64,000 nucleotides of DNA from NCBI RefSeq assembly GCF_032191835.1, contig NC_083237.1:8618001-8682000 (forward strand). The letters run 5' to 3'. Below the pieces are notes generated by a model, which worked only from the letters and a program-made list of their open reading frames with translations, was not told where the DNA came from and did no database searches. Of the stretch, positions 46,999 through 64,000 are shown piece after piece. The stretch comes from Heteronotia binoei (taxonomy: Eukaryota). A program made the position numbers and the translations under genes. Position 1 is the stretch's first letter. Each line of letters starts with the position of its first letter.

Positions 46999-47930
46999 TG
47001 TGTATGTATGCCATCAAGGTGCAGCCAACTTATGGTGACCCTAGGGTTTTCATGACAAGAATGTCCGGCCCCTGCCCAGCCGAGCCAGCTTGCAGGCTAT
47101 AGGCTGGGGGCCGTCTTTGCGTCCCCGGAAGGAGGGAGGGGCAGCAACATCACCCGACATACGGGTGTTTAGCGAGGCGTGGAGATGGGGCTTTATAAGT
47201 CCCGGCTCCCGCCTCACTACGCAGTTTGTTTTCGGCTCTCTGCCCGCCCACCCTTCCCATCGGCAGTACAGGTGTATGCCGGTCGCCTTTTGGGGCCAGG
47301 TAGGAATTTTTTCACCCCCGCACAATTGGCCTATGTGGGGGTGTTTTTCGCCTACCTTGTACTGCCTAGTAGGTTAGGTTTTGCCAAGTATTAGTTTGGT
47401 CGCAGGCTGGATGGGGTTTGGCCACAGCGTTTCCCAGGGGAGCACCTATGGCCTAGCACCGTTGGTGCGGTGGTCTGCAGGAACCGTAGATGGGCTAAAC
47501 GGCTCAGTATGGTGATGCAGATCACAGGGAGCCTCACCTGGGTGGATCTTTCCATAGGGATTGATGCCAGCCCGGTTGGTGACGGCTGGAGGCCTGGCCG
47601 CTCAGTTACAACCCGATTTCGGCGGGTTTGTGCTGGGGGCAGGGTGGCTCGCCCTTTGGACAAGGCGGGGTCCAGGTGTTGACCCCAGGGCTTGTCTGGT
47701 TTGGTTTCCCCCCCTGCCAGTTATTGGTTATTTGTTATTTCTAATAAAGCGGCCCGGTTTAAAACCCAACAATCGTGTCTGCCTCTTCTTTCCGACTGGG
47801 GGGGCAAATGTACAGAGGTAGTTTGCCATTTCCTGCCACTGTGTATCAGCCCCAGATTTCCTTGATGGTCTCCCATCCAAGTACTAACCAGGGCTGACTC
47901 TTAGTTTCCAAGATTGAATGAGATCAGGAT
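46999..47930 (-). mobile_element. 5S rRNA-derived SINE (SINE3-type) interrupted by a Ngaro terminal unit
   Basis: 47867-47930 is the reverse complement of the 5S segment GATCTC..GGAAGCTAAG...CCTGGTTAGTACTTGGATGGGAGACC; GGCAAAC/GTTTGCCAT tail; related scraps at about 22945 and 53285. Confidence 0.7.
47064..47807 (+). mobile_element. Solo A-B terminal unit of a Ngaro-type retrotransposon (related, diverged family)
   Basis: Starts TCCGGCCCCT and ends GGGGCAA, the same termini as 58383->57651; internal blocks GGGGCCAGGTAGGAATTTTT and TTTTTCGCCTACCTTGTACTG are shared. Confidence 0.82.
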
Positions 47931-55872: not shown

Positions 55873-57650
55873 GTCTTCACTTAATTCAGGGGTACTAATT
55901 TAATTCAGGAATACTCAGAGCTCCTGCTTTTACAACTGATCTCCAGCTGGCAGAGATCAGCTCCTCTGGAGAAAATGGCTGCTTTGAAGGGTGGACTCTA
56001 TGGCATTGTACCATGCTGAGCCCCCTCCCCTCCCCAAACCCTACCCTCTCCTGGCTCCACCCCCAAAGCCTCCAGGTATTTTCCAACACAGACCTGGAAG
56101 CCCGACTCCCTGACTTTCTGTACTTGGTTCTGCCTCTGGTGGCAACCATGTTATGGTTGCATTAAGCACAAAACAAAGAGACATGCTACATGTTAATTAA
56201 TGCAATTCATTTTCATAACCCATTGGCTGATTTATTGTGCTTCATGGTTATATATTGCTTTTGGTGCATTTTGTGGTTGCATGGCAGCTACCTCCTTGTG
56301 TCAGAATTTCAAAGGTGCTTGTAAGCTCAGAAAGGTGAGGGACACCTAACTGAACTTGTTTCCAGTATTTATTTTTTCATTTACAGGGAGGCAAAAACTT
56401 TGCCAAATGCACTAAAGACAAAAATTATTCTTTTTTGCAGACATGGAGGACTGTATTAAATGTCCAGATGATCAGTATGCAAGTGAGAGCAGTGATCGAT
56501 GCATTCCCAAGACAATCAACTTTCTGTCTTATGAAGAACCTTTAGGAATCAGTTTGGCTTCAATTACAGTTTCTTATTCTCTCATCACAGTCTTGGTTCT
56601 AGGAACTTTCATTAGGCACAAAGATACCCCCATAGTGAAAGCAAACAACCGAGATATCACATACACTCTTCTTATCACTCTCTTGCTATGTTTCCTTTGT
56701 CCTTTGCTCTTCATTGGTGACCCAAGCAAGGTGAACTGCTTCTTCCGACAACCAGCTTTTGGCATCATCTTCTCAGTGGCTGTTTCTTGTGTGTTGGCCA
56801 AAACCATCACCGTGGTGGTAGCTTTCATGATCATTAAACCAGGATCCAGGATCAGGAAGTGGGTGGGGAAAAGACTGACCAACTCCATTCTCCTGTCTTG
56901 TTCCTTCATTCAAGTAGTCATTTGTACGATATGGCTAGGAACATCTCCCCCTTTCCCACATATTGACATGCAGTCATTGACTAGAGAGATCACTCTAGGA
57001 TGCAATGAAGGGTCTGTCATCATATTCTATACAGTCTTGGGCTACATGGGTCTTCTATCAGTCATAGGTTTGATTGCGGCTTTCTTTGCACGGAAGTTAC
57101 CAGACAGTTTCAATGAAGCCAAGTACATCTCCTTCAGTATGCTGATCTTTTTCAGTGTTTGGGTGACTTTTGTTCCTACGTATTTGAGCACCAAAGGGAA
57201 ATACATGGTAGTTGTGGAGATCTTCTCTATCATAGCATCTGGGGCTGGTTTACTGGTTTGTATCTTTTCCCCCAAATGCTACATTCTTCTGCTGAAGCCA
57301 GGGTTGAATAAGAGGGAGCAACTAATAAGAAAAAACTATTAAATATCTGCTGTACTGTATTCTTGGTATTTCTTCATTAGTTTCTATGTAGCTGATTGGT
57401 TTTAGATAAAATGCTGCCTAGGGTAGTCTTTGACATACAAGTGGCACAAGTCTTCATCTTCTTATTTGGGGTGTATACTGAGAACAAAAATTGGTATAGA
57501 TTCAGATCTGGTCTTCAGGGGATTTTTTTTAAACTGTGATTGCTTATTTGTAGGTAGGACATTACCATTTCAGGATTCAAATATATGTGTTTTTGAGTTT
57601 GGGTTCATTGTTTTCAATAGGAAATGCATGTGAGTATCAGGGGTAGCTGT

Positions 57651-58045
57651 TTGCCCCGCCCCCAGTCAGAAGAACGAGACAACACAGTATATTGGGTAAT
57701 AAACAGGGCAACTTTATTGAACAAGAACAGCCTGGGGCAAACTAACTACTACCGGACAGGCCAAGGGAAGCACCCCAGACCCTTCCCTGTCCGGATGGGC
57801 GAGCCACCCAGCCCCCAGCAGTAGCCCGTTTAAACTGGCTGCTGCCAGGCTGGCGCAGGCCGGGTATCCCCCAAGTGGCACTGCCACCCACCCAGGGATC
57901 GCCTGCCAAAGGAGGGAACCCTATAGCGGGCAAGACAGCAGAGAGCCGTACAGCCCCACTGCCGTCCGATCCCACTACTTCCCTTAAAACCGGGAAAACC
58001 GTGGGTGCACACCGAAAACCTGGATACCTACTTAAACTCCCGCCA
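57651..58045 (-). repeat. Ngaro repeat B2
   Basis: Direct copy of 58384-58777 (about 21 differences by eye). Confidence 0.92.
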
Positions 58046-58205
58046 AATAAAGTTACCAAACCTAACCCAACCTCAAGGCAAACAGTACAAGGTAGGCGAA
58101 AAACATCCTAACCATGGCCAATCAGTTAGGATGAAAAAATTCCTACCTGGCCCCATAAACTCGGTGACCGAAGAAGCCTGTACTATTGCAGGGTGGGAAG
58201 GTGGG

Positions 58206-58383
58206 CCAAAACCACCGTCGAAGTGCGTAGCTCTGGGCGTGGCTGGGCTTATAAAACCCCCAGGCCATACCCAGCAATGTCCCCAGATGGACGGAGGACC
58301 GTTTGCCTCGGCTCCATCCGGGGAGGCAAACGCGGCCCCCGCCCTATGCCGCTGAACGTCGGCACAGGCGGGAAGGGGCCGGA
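58206..58383 (-). repeat. Ngaro repeat A2
   Basis: Direct copy of 63497-63670 (about 23 differences by eye). Confidence 0.9.
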
Positions 58384-58777
58384 TTGCCCCCCCCAGTCGG
58401 AAGAATGAGACAACACGGTATATTGGGTAATAAACAGAGCAACATTATTGAACAAGAACAGCCTGGGGGCAAACTACCTACTACCGGACAGGCCAAGGGA
58501 AACACCCCAGACCCTTCCCTGTTCGGATGGACGAGCCACCCAGCCCCCAGCAGTAGCCCGTTTAAACTGGATGCTGCCAGGCCGGCGCAGGCCGGGTATC
58601 CCCCAAGTGGCACTGCCGCCCACCCAGGGATGGCCTGCCAGAGGAGGGAACCCTATAGTGGGCAAGACAGCAGAGAGCCGTACAGCCCCGCTGCCGTCTG
58701 ATCCCGCTACTTCCCTTAAAACCGGGAAAACCGTGGGTGCACACCGAAAACCTGGATACCTACTTAAACTCCCGCCA
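58384..58777 (-). repeat. Ngaro repeat B1
   Basis: TTGCCCC...ACTTAAACTCCCGCCA, duplicated at 57651. Confidence 0.92.
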
Positions 58778-58797
58778 CCACAATGCCAAGCCTCAGC

Positions 58798-59988
58798 TTA
58801 GGCACTTGGGCCCACCGGTTGGCCTAAAGCCAGCCGAAGCCCCATCTGTAGTTCACACAAAAATGCCCTGTTGCCCGTTACGGACAGGTGGACACCGTCC
58901 TGCTGATACAGGTCCACCCTATCCGACCTTATAGCAGGGTGGGGCAGGTACACGCCAAGGCCACCACAAAGCGCCTTCTTAATCGCCCTGTTGGCCTTAC
59001 GTCTAGCTCTCTCGGCCCCGGCGGGGTCCCAAGCAGCTCTCCACACCTGCCGAGGAAGGATGGCGGACCACAGTATGAGCACCTCGGGCCACCTGCTCCG
59101 AATCACCTTGAAGTCTTCGATCGCCTGCAGTGACAGGGCCCTCCCCTTCACCAGGCCGAGATCGTTACCACCAAGGTGAATAACCAAAATCTGAGGCAGA
59201 GGACGGTTCCTCCCCTGAAAAAGAAGTGGCAGGAGTCCGTCCCAGCGAAGGCCCCGACGCTCCTGCCACTCAACGACTGCCCACTCGCTGAGGCCCAACT
59301 GCAATCCAATGGGTGAGCGCCGGGCCTGGTGGGCAGCCCAAAATACCATGCTGTGGCTGGCGATCAGTATCCTCCATCTCTTGCCCTGTGCCACAGCACC
59401 TAAAACAAAAGAACAGAGTAACCAACATTGTAAAACTAACCCCAGACTAACACTTGCTGGGTAAAATTGGGTGAACATAACCCTTGTATGCCATGGACCT
59501 CCACCGCCCCACATGCTGAATGGCCAGTCCAGGGTACCCCATGGCAGCTGCTGTAGATGCCACCCCAATACAGAACGAATGGGTCCCAAAACGGACACCA
59601 TCTTCCGTAGCCTGAAATCGTCCGAAGCGTCAGGCAGACCCCTTATTTTACTAGTGAACGCTAGGGCTGCCAACTTAGCCCTGATGGTCTTAACCACAAG
59701 CCCCTTACCTTTTAAATATATGCAGAACTGCATAAGATGGGCCGCTGGTACCGGCCAATGATTGGCCAACCCTACCTGATCCCTAAAAGCCTGGAACTGC
59801 TCGACAGAGCGATCATAGGTTTTCTGGGTAAAAGGTGCCGGAGCTAGCATCATTGCCTGGTCAGCCTCGACTCTCCAAGCTGCCACATCTCTGGGGGCAT
59901 CCGGGCTGGCAGAACGTCGGCTTCCGGTGCAAGCAGTCGAAATCACTCCATCTGCCGGCGAGACAGAGTGTCCGCAACTCCATTGCAC
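58798..59988 (-). CDS. Chimeric ORF: YR N-terminal (SAM-like) domain fused by deletion to an SGNH/GDSL hydrolase (hydrolase domain about 58798-59399)
   Basis: N-terminal APFTQKTYDR...LAALAF; hydrolase blocks SHS, GLRW, HLGGND and DGVHL. Confidence 0.8.
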   Translation of the reverse strand: MQWSCGHSVSPADGVISTACTGSRRSASPDAPRDVAAWRVEADQAMMLAPAPFTQKTYDRSVEQFQAFRDQVGLANHWPVPAAHLMQFCIYLKGKGLVVKTIRAKLAALAFTSKIRGLPDASDDFRLRKMVSVLGPIRSVLGWHLQQLPWGTLDWPFSMWGGGGPWHTRVMFTQFYPASVSLGLVLQCWLLCSFVLGAVAQGKRWRILIASHSMVFWAAHQARRSPIGLQLGLSEWAVVEWQERRGLRWDGLLPLLFQGRNRPLPQILVIHLGGNDLGLVKGRALSLQAIEDFKVIRSRWPEVLILWSAILPRQVWRAAWDPAGAERARRKANRAIKKALCGGLGVYLPHPAIRSDRVDLYQQDGVHLSVTGNRAFLCELQMGLRLALGQPVGPSA

Positions 59989-61569
59989 ACACCAGGCACG
60001 TGCTTAGCGAGGAACAAAATATTAAAACGTAAACAACGTAAGGTAAAGGCCCTAACCAGTCGCATAACAGGAACCGATTTAGAGGTCAGGGTATTAATCA
60101 CATGAACTACAGCCATATTGTCGCATCAAAAGTGCACGACGTGGTTGGCTAAGTCCCCACCCCATAACTGAACTGCCACAACTATTGGGAAAAATTCCAA
60201 AAAGGTCAAGTTACGACAAAGGTCACTGTCCAGCCATTCGGCGGGCCAACTCTCCATGCACCAATGCCCGCGGAAATAGACCCCGAAACCAATCGAGCCG
60301 GCGGCGTCTGACATGATCTGAAGATTAGCTTCGATCCTCATATCCTCGTGCCAAAAGGACACCCCGTTAAAGTCAGACAAAAAATGCTCCCAGACCTCAA
60401 AGTCTTGCCTCATTCCCCAGCTGATCCTAACCCGATGATGGGGCATACGCAACGCTCCCATAGCGTCGCACAGTCGTCGTAAAAACACCCTCCCCGGGGC
60501 CACCACTTTGCACGCAAAGTTGAGGTGGCCCACAATCTGCTGTAGTTCCAGTAGTGAAATCTTACACTTACCTTTCACCACTACCAGCTTCTGCCGTAAA
60601 CAGTCAATCTTTTCAGCCGGCAACCAGGAGGCCTGCCGCACTGTGTCCAACTCGATGCCCAAAAAGGTCAAAACAAGGGCCAGGCCCTCCGTTCTTTTCG
60701 TGGGCGAGTGAGACACCCAGGTCCTCAGCCAACCGCAAAAAGGAGTGGAGCAGCCGGGCACATTGTCCTGACCCCTGTGGGCCCACAAACAAAAAATCAT
60801 CCAAATAATGGATGGTATTGGCGGAACCCACCCGCTCATGCAGGGCCCATTCCAAAAAAGTGCTAAAGCGTTCAAAAGGGGAACAAGAAATAGCACACCC
60901 CATCGGCAAAGCCTGGTCCATGTAGAACCTCCCTTCAAACATAAAGCCGAGGAGTTCAAAATCATCTGGGTGAACCGGCAACAGGCGAAACGCAGACTTA
61001 ATGTCGCTTTTCGCCATTTCAGCCCCGATTCCACAACTCCGGACGACTTTGACAGCCTGATCAAAGGAGGTATACCGGACTGTACACAAGAAGTCTGGAA
61101 TAGCATCGTTCACAGACCCACCTTTTGGATAGGACAGGTGGTGGATCAACCGGAACTCCCCAGGTGCCTTTTTAGGCACTACTCCTAAAGGAGATACCCG
61201 CAAGTTGGGAACTGGGGGTGAGTCAAAAGGGCCTAAAACCCGGCCCTCCTTGCACTCTTTACCGATCTTTTCCTTAACCACCTGCTCCATCCCCCTAATA
61301 GACTGTAAATTCTTAGCCATACAGGGTCCTCTAGGACCCTGGAATGGAATGCGAAAACCATAAAGAAAACCCTCCAACAAATATTCCCTATCACCTACTC
61401 TAGGATAGCCAGCCAAAAGGTTCCTAAGAACCCTCACCTTGATGGGGCTGGGACCCCTTGTTAGCAGCCTGGGTATTCCCGCCCCCACCTGACCACTTTC
61501 CCCCCACCCGGGGTTTGGACCTGTTGCATGTCGACAGTGCTTGTGAACCTCCGCACAATGGACACTCAT
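59850..61569 (-). pseudogene. Ngaro RT/RNase H ORF, disrupted
   Basis: SPLGVVPKK, FRLIHHLS, DIKSAF, LPMG, YLDDFL, FLGIELD, SDAAG, LEFFPI, CDNMAVV, ADTLSR; +1 frameshift near 60690; TGA at 60126-60128 in place of W, and a second stop near 59940. Confidence 0.92.
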
Positions 61570-62961
61570 GCTTGTATTTACACGTTTTCCGGTTACATAC
61601 CCCCTGGGACGTGTATTCCCAACACAGAAGCCGGGGTTGAACCGACTGCCCCACTGCTGTGCGGGGACCCGACATGCCCGCCTGTTTACTCACAAGGTGA
61701 CCACTGTCGGACCTGTCCCCCACGTTGGGCTTCACAGGGGAAATAAGCTGCAGCCAAAGCTGCTGGTTGATTTGGTCCCAGGGGATTGTGGGGTTCAGCA
61801 CTGCCCTCATTCGGAACTCCTTGTCGTACTGCAGCCAAGCTGCGCCCGAGAAGTCCGTATATGCCTTATACACAATATCGCAATACTGGAATAGCAGTGC
61901 CGCCCATAAAGGCTGTGCTTGCACTATCACCCCAGCAAAAATGAGGAACCCTGGTAACCAATTGGCCCAATTCCTTTCAACCTTTCTGTGCTTAATTTTT
62001 TCCTTGTCCTTTTCGTCCAATTCGTCCTTATCCTTCATTTCAAGTTCCCTATAAAGAAGGCTGAAAACATCGACATATTCCCCGTGCAGAATCTTTTCTC
62101 TCGTATCCGCCGTCCGGTGATCCCCCAACGGCATGGCCATGTCGCCAAAAGGGCAGCACTGGAAAGGTACTGACCCAAAGGGGGTCGGGGACCAACCCCC
62201 CCACTGGGTGGCAGGCCACCCAGAGGCCACCCAGAGGGCCATTGACTACCCCATTGATGCCCCCATGGCAGAGATCCACTGGGAGACTGTTGACTCATGA
62301 CCCCCTGGGATGTGAAAGGGGTGCTGGCCGTTGTGGAGACCTGTGCAGGGCCCCAAGGCAGGATCTGTCCCTGCCCGCATGGGCCCCAGCCACAAGCTGC
62401 CCCCGGCGAACCCAAAAACCCCCCTATTGCTCCCGGGCCTAACATAGATGAAGAAACAGCTGATCCAGGCGGATAGAGGGGGCCCCAACCACCCCACAGC
62501 CAAACGCCAGAGTTGCCCGGCCTACCTTGCTCACCATCAGAGTCATCCATGCCAACTGCCACTACAATAGGCGCTAAACCGCTGCCTCTATCCAAACAAG
62601 CAGGCCCTTCCAGGGGGTTACCTTCTTCCTCCGAATCCATGTTGGTATCAGGGGGATCATGGCTGGGCCTGCCGGAAGGGCCCGGCTGGGCCGACATGTC
62701 CTGCAAGGTAGAAAGGCGAGCCAGGGCCTCCTGTTCGAAGGCCTTGGTAGACAACCGCACAGCTTTGCATCCCCGCACCAGCCCAGTTGCCCCGGAAGCC
62801 AATTCCTGCTGCCGCTCTAAGGCAGCAAGCCTATCCACTATGGCCTGCCTAGTGCGGGCCTCCTCGTCTTCACCAGGGCAACTTGCAGGAACTGGCCTTT
62901 TGGGTGCAGTCTTCACAGGCTGCTTGCCCTTTGAATTTCCTTGGCCCTTCTTGGGAGCCAT
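61424..62961 (-). pseudogene. Ngaro gag-like ORF1, split into two frames near 62200
   Basis: MAPKK basic N-terminus; PLGDH..REKI.GEYVD.FSLL; C-terminal CWEY...C...C.Y.H.C..CGG zinc-finger cluster; overlaps the RT ORF start. Confidence 0.85.
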
Positions 62962-63496
62962 GTCCAGGAGCCCACTGCGTAAAAAAACCCAGGGGGGGCA
63001 CCCCCACCCGCTCTTGATCCGCTAAGGCTAGGGCCCCACCCCTGGGGGCTGCTTCCCACGGAGGCCGCTCCCTCTGGCCGGCCGAAAGCACACTAAACAG
63101 GGATTGGGGGGGGGAATATGCCCATGAAGAGGGTGGGCGCATAAAGGCCTGCTGCCTCCTATCGAGCGCTCTACCCTCACACCTATCGAGGATGCCCGCC
63201 CTGTACAACGCGCTCCCTCGTGGTTCCTAGGCAAGGCAGGGATTGGGAGGGGGAGGGGGGGGAATATGCCCCAGTGGAGGGTAGGCGTGTGAAGGCCTGC
63301 CGCCTCCCCTCGAGCGCGCCGCCCTCGCTCCTGTCGGGGACGCCGACCCAGACAACGCGCTCCCCGGTCCACAATCCAGAGGTGAAGCGATCATCCCAGG
63401 GACGCCAAAGCCCGATCAGTGACTTCCTCAGTTGCCGCCGCCATCGAGCAGGCCCCGCCGCAGGCTGCCTCAAGGAGCCACACACCTCTCCGCTTC

Positions 63497-63670
63497 CCAA
63501 AACCACTGGCAAAGTGCATAGCTCCGGGCGTGGCCAGGCTTATAAAGCCCCAGGCCACGCCCAGCAACATCCCTGGATGGATGGAGGACCATTTGCCTCG
63601 GCTCCATCCAGAGAGGCAAACGCGGCCCCTGCCCTATGCCGCCGAACGTCACCAGCGGGAAGGGGCCGGA
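63497..63670 (-). repeat. Ngaro repeat A1 (5' terminus)
   Basis: Minus strand starts TCCGGCCCCTTCCCGC; homologous to 58206-58383. Confidence 0.9.
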
Positions 63671-64000
63671 TTATAAAAACAATAGGACCAAATTTGCTAA
63701 AGTCCCCCCTCCCCCAGTTTCTATTGGACCAAGAGGATGATTTTACAGACTCCAAAGTGGATGCATCCCAGTACACACCCAGTGCCCTCTACCAGTTCCT
63801 AAAATGATGGACAAGCAGCAGCTAAGCAGACAAGCTCTGGCTGGCTATAGCATTAAACACGCACACACACACACACACACACATATACAAATCTTGTCTA
63901 CCTACTCTTACAGGGACTGACTTCCAGTAAAAATTCCTGATGGTTCCACTCAAAGCTCTGCATTTGCCATCTTGTTTTTTGACCTGTTTGTTTCCTTTTT

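What the first reader, a model, noticed from the sequence alone, without database searches (positions are those of the whole stretch)
57651..63670. Ngaro-type YR retrotransposon carrying an SGNH-hydrolase cargo ORF
Seen in the sequence: A1-gag-RT/RH-YR-hydrolase-B1-A2-B2, no TSD, located 309 bp downstream of and antisense to gene D. Established: split direct repeats define Ngaro elements of the DIRS order; SGNH hydrolases use Ser/Gly/Asn/His blocks; such ORFs are known from some vertebrate Ngaro elements and some LINE ORF1 proteins, with unclear function. Here the hydrolase keeps Ser (SHS), GxND and DxxH and is uninterrupted, while gag, RT/RH and YR are all broken. A role in membrane or lipid interaction of the particle, or preferential retention, is inference.
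Basis: partly seen in the sequence, partly recalled or inferred. Interest (0 to 1): 0.8.

Follow-up and report, generated by a model that had tools for sequence, protein, structure and literature searches.

The report
Dead Ngaro retrotransposon with spliced esterase exon
This is a decayed copy of a known kind of jumping gene (a Ngaro retrotransposon) in a gecko-like lizard genome; its still-open lipase-like "extra gene" is best read as the second exon of a spliced Gag-start/esterase fusion, and it probably survived here by chance, not by selection.

Summary
On the minus strand, 63672-57651, lie A1, gag, RT/RNase H, a YR remnant, an SGNH hydrolase, then B1-A2-spacer-B2, with no target duplication, 309 bp from a V2R-type last exon. 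Gag has a frameshift, RT a frameshift, RNase H a stop, and YR has lost about 158 codons. The hydrolase is uninterrupted and folds as an SGNH esterase.

Ngaro elements with a hydrolase after YR are already published (fish, amphibians), so this is a new squamate member of a known kind.

The hydrolase frame has no ATG before its catalytic Ser in six related copies. It begins at a consensus 3' splice site 17-62 nt after the YR stop. A phase-matched consensus donor sits at gag codon ~140. Gene models in Eublepharis, Rhineura and Anolis join exactly these sites. In the window the join gives an open 342-codon Gag-N/SGNH reading frame. No RNA data could be obtained. This scan has already noted the same splice on other copies in this genome.

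Preferential retention is not supported. Zero lesions in 0.6 kb has a chance of about 0.44, and this copy carries the most changes at family-invariant residues, including GHS to SHS.

The parts
63497..63672 (-). A1, the 5' split direct repeat; holds a TATAA box at 63544-63540
   Evidence: Matches A2 at 87.5% identity; the TATAA is present in both A copies.
62962..63496 (-). 5' untranslated leader with a 148-nt tandem duplication (63349-63255 / 63201-63107)
   Evidence: Repeat family D3, 78% identity; sequence read.
62535..62961 (-). Predicted exon 1 coding part: gag ATG plus the first 142 codons and 1 nt (basic MAPKKG..KGKQP start, two LxRLxALE helices)
   Evidence: Open frame; aligns with the N-termini of the ~340-aa lizard Gag-N/SGNH proteins.
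62525..62538 (-). 5' splice donor GATG|GTGAGC (exon ends 62535, GT 62534-62533), phase 1; a second in-phase donor CAAG|GTAGG lies 9 nt downstream (exon end 62526)
   Evidence: Read; homologous to the annotated donors GATG|GTAAGT in Eublepharis (L001, L010), and same phase as those of Rhineura and Anolis.
61424..62961 (-). gag, broken by a frameshift near 62180-62240; the C-terminal part holds a Cys/His zinc-finger-like motif
   Evidence: tblastn of the L001 gag gives two frames, residues 2-307 and 240-492; ORFs 62035-62961 and 61424-62242.
59874..61254 (-). RT/RNase H, broken by a frameshift (~60658-60698), a TGA at 60128-60126 and a TGA at 59945-59943
   Evidence: Pfam RVT_1 E 4e-9; 67-74% identity to the L001 RT/RH in two frames with two internal stops.
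59465..59886 (-). Tyrosine recombinase remnant: the N-terminal SAM-like part (residues 4-101) joined out of frame to residues 260-305; about 158 codons of the catalytic core are missing
   Evidence: tblastn with the L001 YR; the L001 YR itself hits Pfam Phage_integrase at residues 171-296, 29.9 bits, above its cut-off.
59400..59420 (-). 3' splice site: pyrimidine tract and AG (59401-59400)
   Evidence: Read; same position as the annotated acceptors in L001, L002, L010 and L016, which lie 17-62 nt after the YR stop.
58798..59399 (-). SGNH hydrolase exon (2 nt + 199 codons + TAA): SHS 59358-59350, GGND 59172-59161, DGVH 58899-58888
   Evidence: Pfam PF13472 E 5e-7; PDB profile hit 4C1B E 2.5e-6; AlphaFold model pLDDT 83 with SGNH fold matches; gap-free alignment to the L001 hydrolase.
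58386..58777 (-). B1 repeat (its poly(A) signal is mutated to AATAAT)
   Evidence: 95.4% identical to B2.
58206..58385 (-). A2 repeat
58046..58205 (-). Unique spacer between A2 and B2, with an ENE-like hairpin (58148-58090) that has two facing U-runs
   Evidence: Not repeated elsewhere in the element; RNA fold -28.4 kcal/mol, z -3.1; an equivalent spacer exists in L001.
57651..58045 (-). B2 repeat, the 3' end of the element; AATAAA at 57718-57713
   Evidence: L001 has AATAAA at the same place in both its B copies.
56443..57342 (+). Context: last (7TM) exon of a V2R-type class C receptor ('gene D'), ending 309 nt from the element, on the opposite strand
   Evidence: Pfam 7tm_3 E 1e-82.

Best explanation
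The stretch is a dead, roughly 6.0-kb copy of a gecko-clade Ngaro (DIRS-order, tyrosine-recombinase) retrotransposon, inserted antisense just downstream of a V2R gene.

How active relatives are read to work. The A repeat carries the promoter and the B repeat the poly(A) signal. The unspliced RNA serves as genome and as mRNA for Gag, RT/RNase H and YR. YR inserts the cDNA without a target duplication (established model for the order, not tested here).

The SGNH hydrolase is not a free-standing fourth ORF. It is exon 2 of a spliced subgenomic mRNA. A donor at gag codon ~140 is joined, in phase 1, to an acceptor just after the YR stop. This removes a 3.1-3.6-kb intron that holds the rest of gag, RT/RNase H and YR. 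The product is a ~340-aa protein: the basic, two-helix Gag N-terminus fused to an SGNH esterase, much as retroviruses make env mRNA.

By homology with the LINE ZfL2-1 ORF1p esterase, the enzyme most likely acts on or binds membrane lipids during particle assembly or trafficking. Sharing the Gag N-terminus could bring it to the Gag/RNA particle; both of these steps are inferred.

In this window copy gag, RT, RNase H and YR are all disabled. The 342-codon spliced frame is still open, most likely by chance, and its enzyme is probably impaired (GHS to SHS plus three other hits on invariant residues).
For: Shown by sequence or tools:
- Element anatomy: split repeats, domains and lesions.
- An intact relative: the Eublepharis copy L001 has 100% identical A and B pairs and open gag, RT/RH, YR and hydrolase frames.
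- Gene models: P0001, P0008, P0023 and P0038 are each reproduced exactly by one GT-AG, phase-1 intron of 3.45-3.6 kb running from gag codon ~130-140 to the hydrolase exon. This holds in Eublepharis (two families), Rhineura (checked in 3 of its 8 fetched loci) and Anolis carolinensis.
- Donors are near consensus (GTAAGT, GTGAGT, GTAAAG; window GTGAGC), although the surrounding Gag sequence is barely conserved.
- Acceptors follow pyrimidine tracts 17-62 nt after the YR stop.
- In six related copies from at least three sources, no ATG precedes the catalytic Ser in the hydrolase frame.
- The window has the homologous donor and acceptor in matching phase, giving an open 342-codon frame.
- The ~340-aa Gag-N/SGNH architecture is annotated across Gekkota, Amphisbaenia, Anguimorpha, Iguania and Cordylidae.
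- The same exon is spliced onto host genes (TSG101, DUSP12), which suggests that its acceptor works in vivo.
- SGNH fold, and closest solved relative 4C1B, the ZfL2-1 esterase. That esterase's hydrolytic activity and phospholipid binding are published (PMC3905857).
- Chance intactness: 4 clear lesions in ~2.9 kb give 0.83 expected in exon 2, so P(0) is about 0.44. The window copy departs at 4 of 54 invariant positions, the most of 14 sequences.
Against: No RNA evidence.

The three Logan contigs fetched that carry the hydrolase are all unspliced. A search centred on the junction found no protein spanning it.

The gene models are automatic predictions and may lean on one another.

The primary Ngaro papers (Goodwin & Poulter 2004; Poulter & Butler 2015) are not held in the library. 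I therefore cannot rule out that they discuss how the hydrolase is expressed.

The lipid-related role and co-assembly with Gag are inferences. A trimer prediction of the leader gave no verdict.

The chance-intactness argument rests on a single copy.
Confidence: 0.7

Rival explanations
1. The hydrolase is a separate fourth ORF ('cargo') translated from the unspliced element RNA. Translation would start by reinitiation, a non-AUG start, or a frameshift or read-through from YR. The spliced gene models would then be annotation artefacts.
For: The published description of Xenopus Ngaro families lists four overlapping ORFs, the last being the SGNH one (PMC9210276). In L001 the hydrolase frame opens 11 nt before the YR stop, so a YR-hydrolase frameshift fusion is geometrically possible. 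No spliced cDNA was found.
Against: There is no ATG before the catalytic Ser in six copies. Consensus donor and acceptor sites are conserved in position and phase across four lizard lineages, in otherwise poorly conserved sequence. The same acceptor is used by host-gene chimeras that are under purifying selection.
Confidence: 0.17
2. The hydrolase of this particular copy is kept intact by selection, either as a domesticated host gene or as a trans-acting helper for other copies, as the reader's 'preferential retention' suggests.
For: It is the only long reading frame of the element without a stop, frameshift or deletion. SGNH exons of this family have been domesticated elsewhere: in TSG101 of snakes and Varanus, dN/dS is 0.19.
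Against: P(no lesion by chance) is about 0.44 for exon 2 and about 0.24 for both exons. There are four replacements at positions invariant in the 13 relatives, including the Gly next to the catalytic His-Ser and a Gly in the conserved G-R-R-G stretch; this is the highest count in the set. The element is antisense to the only neighbouring gene, so no host exon can feed its acceptor. The conserved Glu of the second leader helix is also replaced.
Confidence: 0.07
3. The 396-aa ORF (59988-58798) is a genuine YR-N-terminal/SGNH fusion protein created by the internal deletion.
For: It is one uninterrupted frame that holds a recombinase SAM-like N-terminus and the whole SGNH domain.
Against: The linker of about 75 residues is out-of-frame YR remnant plus intron end, with no homology in frame. 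Nothing of this architecture appears among the homologues. The upstream RT/RH frame is closed by stops, and no promoter precedes the ORF.
Confidence: 0.03

Closest known systems
Ngaro-like elements of amphibians and fish with a Hydro-SGNH ORF after YR (e.g. Xenopus tropicalis DIRS-53_XT/54_XT; Goodwin & Poulter 2004 as cited in PMC9210276)
   Same: The gene order is gag - RT/RH - YR - SGNH hydrolase, with split direct repeats A1...B1-A2-B2 and no methyltransferase. The function of the hydrolase is unproven in both.
   Different: This one is a squamate (gecko-clade) family, and the copy is dead. It has a ~160-nt unique spacer with a U-rich hairpin between A2 and B2. The hydrolase is read here as a spliced exon fused to the Gag N-terminus; the papers I could read describe it only as an additional overlapping ORF.
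Esterase domain of LINE ORF1 proteins (zebrafish ZfL2-1 ORF1p, PDB 4C1B; PMC3905857)
   Same: It is the best solved-structure match by sequence profile (E 2.5e-6). Both are SGNH esterases encoded by a retroelement and joined to an N-terminal helical region of the particle-forming protein. For ZfL2-1, esterase activity and binding of negatively charged phospholipids have been shown.
   Different: The element class differs (YR retrotransposon versus non-LTR LINE). There the esterase is an integral part of ORF1p; here it would be attached to the Gag N-terminus only in a spliced isoform. Block I is GHS rather than GDS. No biochemistry exists for the Ngaro enzyme.
Spliced subgenomic env mRNA of retroviruses and env-bearing LTR retrotransposons (own knowledge)
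   Same: One donor near the 5' end and one acceptor after the pol-equivalent genes remove gag-pol and let a 3' accessory gene be translated.
   Different: Here the donor lies about 140 codons inside gag, so the product is a Gag-N fusion, not a separate signal-peptide protein. The product is an esterase, not a membrane fusion glycoprotein. Splicing is predicted, not shown.
PAF acetylhydrolase Ib alpha subunits and bacterial GDSL/SGNH acylhydrolases
   Same: They share the fold (TM 0.62-0.73) and the Ser / Gly / Asn / Asp-x-x-His catalytic layout. UniRef even names some lizard copies after PAF-AH.
   Different: Sequence identity is only 12-20%. These are cellular enzymes with no link to mobile elements.

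Membership tests
Ngaro (DIRS order, YR retrotransposons) | Split direct repeats A1 ... B1-A2-B2, with A1 matching A2 and B1 matching B2 | tested here: met
   A pair 176 nt at 87.5% identity; B pair 393 nt at 95.4%. An extra ~160-nt unique spacer lies between A2 and B2.
Ngaro (DIRS order, YR retrotransposons) | Encodes a tyrosine recombinase instead of a DDE integrase | tested here: met
   Only as a remnant: residues 4-101 and 260-305 align to the YR ORF of the intact relative L001 (55-70% identity), and that ORF hits Pfam Phage_integrase above its cut-off. The catalytic core is deleted in the window copy.
Ngaro (DIRS order, YR retrotransposons) | Reverse transcriptase / RNase H ORF | tested here: met
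   RVT_1 E 4e-9; 67-74% identity to the L001 RT/RH over 458 residues.
Ngaro (DIRS order, YR retrotransposons) | No methyltransferase domain (this separates Ngaro from DIRS1-like and PAT-like elements) | tested here: met
   RT/RH runs directly into YR, and no further Pfam family is found in the window or L001 ORFs.
Ngaro (DIRS order, YR retrotransposons) | No target-site duplication | tested here: met
   The flanks share at most the dinucleotide AA.
Ngaro (DIRS order, YR retrotransposons) | RT and YR fall in the Ngaro clade in a phylogeny with reference DIRS1, PAT and Ngaro sequences | not tested
SGNH/GDSL hydrolase superfamily | Block I nucleophile Ser | tested here: met
   Ser at 59352-59350, invariant in 14 of 14 sequences. 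However, the motif is SHS here against GHS in all the relatives.
SGNH/GDSL hydrolase superfamily | Block II Gly and Block III Asn (oxyanion hole) | tested here: met
   Invariant G49 (in RRG) and GGND (N78) are present. The neighbouring near-invariant G46 is replaced by Glu in the window.
SGNH/GDSL hydrolase superfamily | Block V Asp-x-x-His | tested here: met
   DGVH at 58899-58888, invariant in the alignment.
SGNH/GDSL hydrolase superfamily | Profile and fold match | tested here: met
   Pfam PF13472 E 5e-7, with 30.8 bits just under the 32.9 cut-off. PDB profile hit 4C1B E 2.5e-6. Model pLDDT 83, with Foldseek probability 1.0 and TM up to 0.73 to SGNH esterases.
SGNH/GDSL hydrolase superfamily | Esterase activity | not testable with these tools
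   Needs an enzyme assay.
Retroelement accessory gene expressed from a spliced subgenomic mRNA (env-like strategy) | Consensus donor and acceptor, phase-compatible and conserved among relatives | tested here: met
Retroelement accessory gene expressed from a spliced subgenomic mRNA (env-like strategy) | The downstream ORF lacks its own start codon | tested here: met
   No ATG before the catalytic Ser in L001, L002, L003, L010, L013 and L014.
Retroelement accessory gene expressed from a spliced subgenomic mRNA (env-like strategy) | The spliced RNA is observed | tested here: inconclusive
   No runs were listed for this genome. The Logan contigs were unspliced. The junction search found nothing spanning the join. 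Only automatic gene models support the join.

The most novel reading that the evidence does not exclude
Vertebrate Ngaro retrotransposons may express their long-unexplained hydrolase the way retroviruses express env. A single splice from inside gag to just behind YR would yield a Gag-N-terminus/SGNH esterase fusion. The strong acceptor of that exon would also make Ngaro insertions natural exon traps. One such capture appears to have become a conserved alternative C-terminus of the ESCRT-I protein TSG101 in snakes and monitor lizards, where the catalytic His is lost and dN/dS is 0.19. I found no paper describing either point, but the founding Ngaro papers could not be read.
Probability: 0.65. 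Interest if true: 0.65.

Novelty: new member of a known kind. Interest (0 to 1): 0.45.

Why it matters
The copy itself is ordinary genomic debris. The value lies in what it and its relatives say about a 20-year-old loose end: what the Ngaro hydrolase is and how it is made.

If the splice is real, the hydrolase is a regulated, Gag-tagged accessory protein and not a passenger. Its parallel with LINE ORF1p esterases, a lipid-binding SGNH domain attached to the particle protein, would then be a case of convergence between two unrelated retroelement classes. That points to membranes as a shared requirement.

The splice also explains why genome annotations of lizards are full of ~340-aa 'uncharacterized' SGNH proteins. 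And it explains why this exon turns up fused to host genes.

Tried and rejected
- RNA evidence. Two run searches (whole element, then the hydrolase exon) listed nothing, so read laying was never used.
- cDNA among Logan contigs. Contigs L013-L015 carry the hydrolase, but tblastn shows all three are unspliced, with YR or RT directly upstream.
- Junction search. A search centred on the junction (P0001:90-200) found only hydrolase-side fragments.
- Frogs. The X. tropicalis model P0062 was not on record. The Rana temporaria locus came without DNA; only its 6.8-kb span for a 587-aa product is known. The splice in amphibians therefore remains unverified.
- Leader self-association. Complex prediction with 3 copies gave no verdict (score 0.09, pLDDT under 50). 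This is not evidence either way.
- Rfam scan of the element. Nothing near any gathering score.
- Literature. No held paper links Ngaro with splicing of the hydrolase. The two key primary sources are not held.
- The 396-aa ORF as a real YR/SGNH fusion. Rejected, because its middle part is out-of-frame remnant.
- Pfam found no family for gag or for the leader.

Full report
**1. What is there**

All element features lie on the minus strand. Repeat finding, pairwise alignment and self-BLAST give:
- A1 63672-63497 and A2 58385-58206, with 22 mismatches in 176 aligned positions.
- B1 58777-58386 and B2 58045-57651, with 18 mismatches in 393.

A1 lies alone at the 5' end, and B1-A2-(spacer)-B2 at the 3' end. 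This is the split-direct-repeat layout that defines Ngaro elements (PMC9210276). A ~160-nt unique spacer (58205-58046) separates A2 from B2. The same spacer exists in an intact gecko relative, so it is a family feature and not damage.

A holds a TATAA box (63544-63540). B2 holds AATAAA (57718-57713), at the same place as in both B copies of the relative. The flanks share at most AA, so there is no target duplication. The element starts 309 nt after the stop of a 7tm_3 (V2R-type) last exon on the plus strand.

**2. Coding content and damage**

The yardstick was L001, a Eublepharis macularius copy with 100% identical A and B pairs and four open frames: gag 492 aa, RT/RH 462 aa, YR 312 aa, and a hydrolase frame. 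Pfam finds RVT_1 in its RT/RH and Phage_integrase (plus a weak SAM-like N-terminus) in its YR.

tblastn of these ORFs onto the window shows:
- gag in two frames, switching near 62180-62240.
- RT/RH in two frames, switching near 60658-60698, with a TGA at 60128-60126 and another at 59945-59943. The second lies 24 codons before the relative's ORF end and may be tolerable.
- YR residues 4-101 joined out of frame to residues 260-305. About 158 codons, including most of the Phage_integrase core, are deleted.
- The hydrolase aligned over all 189 residues without gap or stop (68% identity).

The 396-aa ORF 59988-58798 is an accident. It runs from the YR N-terminus through out-of-frame YR remains and the intron end into the hydrolase.

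**3. The hydrolase is an SGNH esterase**

- Pfam Lipase_GDSL_2 hits at E 5e-7, slightly below its curated score.
- A 14-sequence profile hits PDB 4C1B best, at E 2.5e-6. 4C1B is the esterase of the zebrafish LINE ZfL2-1 ORF1 protein.
- An AlphaFold model (pLDDT 83, pTM 0.82) matches dozens of SGNH esterases and PAF-AH Ib at TM 0.62-0.73.
- Ser (in block I), the RRG Gly, GGND and DGVH are invariant across the family and present in the window.

**4. How it is expressed: the main addition**

The closest proteins are about 340-aa 'uncharacterized' lizard proteins. Their N-termini (MPPKKG.G..KGKQP..., then two LxRLxALE helices) match the start of the window's gag, not anything next to the hydrolase.

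The models were checked against genomic DNA, for P0001, P0008 (two Eublepharis families), P0023 (Rhineura, checked in 3 of its 8 fetched loci) and P0038 (Anolis carolinensis). Each protein is reproduced exactly by one GT-AG intron of 3.45-3.6 kb in phase 1. The intron runs from gag codon ~130-140 to the hydrolase exon and contains the rest of gag, RT/RH and YR.

Three observations support these sites:
- Donors are near consensus (GTAAGT, GTGAGT, GTAAAG), in a Gag region that is otherwise hardly conserved.
- Acceptors follow pyrimidine tracts in the 17-62 nt between the YR stop and the exon.
- In six related copies the hydrolase frame has no ATG before the catalytic Ser. The first Met, if any, is the residue right after it.

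The window has the homologous donor GATG|GTGAGC (exon end 62535) and acceptor ...TTTTGTTTTAG| (exon start 59399), in matching phase. Joining 62961-62535 to 59399-58798 gives an open 342-codon frame.

The same architecture is annotated in Gekkota, Amphisbaenia, Anguimorpha, Iguania and Cordylidae. Frogs have SGNH models with longer, unrelated-looking leaders and a multi-kb span, but I could not verify their introns.

I therefore read the hydrolase as exon 2 of an env-like spliced subgenomic mRNA that encodes a Gag-N-terminus/SGNH fusion. Shown: the signals, the phase, the missing start codon, and the agreement with gene models. Not shown: the RNA itself.

After I had reached this reading, the scan's index showed that other copies in this genome had been read the same way. 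Those are unchecked AI notes and I do not count them as evidence.

**5. Function**

[quoted passage not shown] Its authors propose Gag-like membrane targeting of the LINE particle (PMC3905857).

By analogy, the Ngaro protein most likely acts on or binds membrane lipids, and its shared Gag N-terminus could bring it to the Gag/RNA particle. Both steps are inference. A trimer prediction of the leader gave no verdict.

**6. Is the intact hydrolase here meaningful?**

There are four unambiguous disabling lesions in about 2.9 kb of coding sequence outside the two exons. That predicts 0.83 lesions in the 602-nt exon, so P(0) is about 0.44. For both exons together it predicts 1.4, so P(0) is about 0.24.

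A leave-one-out test was run on the 14-sequence alignment. The window copy differs at 4 of 54 positions that are invariant in all other sequences: C13A, G14S, G46E and R165Q. That is the highest count in the set; the others have 0-3.

This is what neutral decay predicts, not purifying selection. The element is also antisense to the neighbouring gene, so no host exon can use its acceptor. Preferential retention is thus unsupported for this copy. The cross-copy test needs the whole genome.

**7. Age and host**

Repeat divergence is 4.6% for B and 12.5% for A, mostly CpG transitions. In young copies the repeat pairs are identical. Together these indicate an old insertion. With a lizard neutral rate of about 1e-9 per site per year (my own recollection), the age is of the order of 10-50 million years.

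The A/B discrepancy is unexplained.

In a tree of SGNH domains the window groups inside a gecko clade (support 96/93).

**8. Comparison and novelty**

Ngaro elements with a Hydro-SGNH ORF after YR are published for amphibians and fish (PMC9210276; PMC7192593), with the function unproven. This is a new squamate member of that kind, and a dead one.

I found no paper on the splice, but the founding papers are not held in the library.

**9. Seen in passing**

The same SGNH exon forms the C-terminus of the first-listed TSG101 isoform in Varanus and at least 12 snake species.
- It lies inside the TSG101 gene, behind the same acceptor in Varanus and Crotalus, with no other Ngaro remains nearby.
- dN/dS is 0.19, with dS 0.45.
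- All 17 proteins keep GHS and GGND but have Leu in place of the catalytic His.
- In the tree it forms its own long branch, outside the extant squamate Ngaro clade.

This looks like an old domestication of a Ngaro-type hydrolase exon as a pseudo-enzyme tail on an ESCRT-I protein. No paper was found. DUSP12-SGNH models in two gekkonid genera show the same splice-in behaviour; a V2R/SGNH model in Heteronotia has the SGNH part at its N-terminus instead.

Noticed in passing
L017:16010-16583 (Varanus komodoensis) and L018:23255-23828 (Crotalus horridus); proteins P0060, P0061, P0063, P0077-P0090: TSG101 (ESCRT-I) has an isoform in monitor lizards and at least 12 snake species whose C-terminus is a Ngaro-type SGNH exon. 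The acceptor is the same in both genomes, dN/dS is 0.19, and the catalytic His is replaced by Leu in all 17 proteins while GHS and GGND are kept. It looks like a domesticated pseudo-enzyme. No paper was found.
   Followed up: partly
proteins P0012 (Gekko japonicus), P0048 and P0057 (Heteronotia binoei): Gene models fuse DUSP12 to the Ngaro SGNH exon in two gekkonid genera, as expected if the exon's strong 3' splice site traps host transcripts. One V2R model also carries the SGNH part, but at its N-terminus.
   Followed up: no
window 58090-58148 (minus strand), inside the unique spacer 58046-58205: A hairpin with two facing U-runs (GGUAGG-AAUUUUUUC-stem-GUUUUUC-CCUACC), MFE -28.4 kcal/mol, z -3.1. 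It resembles the ENE-like poly(A)-binding candidate noted elsewhere in this genome (s1-321109). There is no Rfam match.
   Followed up: partly
window 63497-63672 / 58206-58385 versus 58386-58777 / 57651-58045: The A repeat pair is nearly three times more diverged (12.5%) than the B pair (4.6%), although both pairs are identical in a young relative. Faster CpG decay in the promoter repeat, or conversion between the adjacent B copies, could explain it.
   Followed up: partly
window 63107-63201 and 63255-63349: A 148-nt tandem duplication (78% identical) lies in the GC-rich 5' leader between A1 and the gag ATG.
   Followed up: no
window 47064-47364: Weak (68%) reverse-strand similarity to the A2-plus-spacer region 58083-58383. 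It probably belongs to a different Ngaro family fragment, the 'solo A-B unit' of scan note s1-340885.
   Followed up: no
proteins P0062, P0064, P0067, P0070, P0073 (frogs): Frog SGNH gene models carry 215-410-aa low-complexity leaders unrelated at BLAST level to the squamate Gag N-terminus. The Rana model spans 6.8 kb. The Rana copy has GHN in place of GHS.
   Followed up: partly
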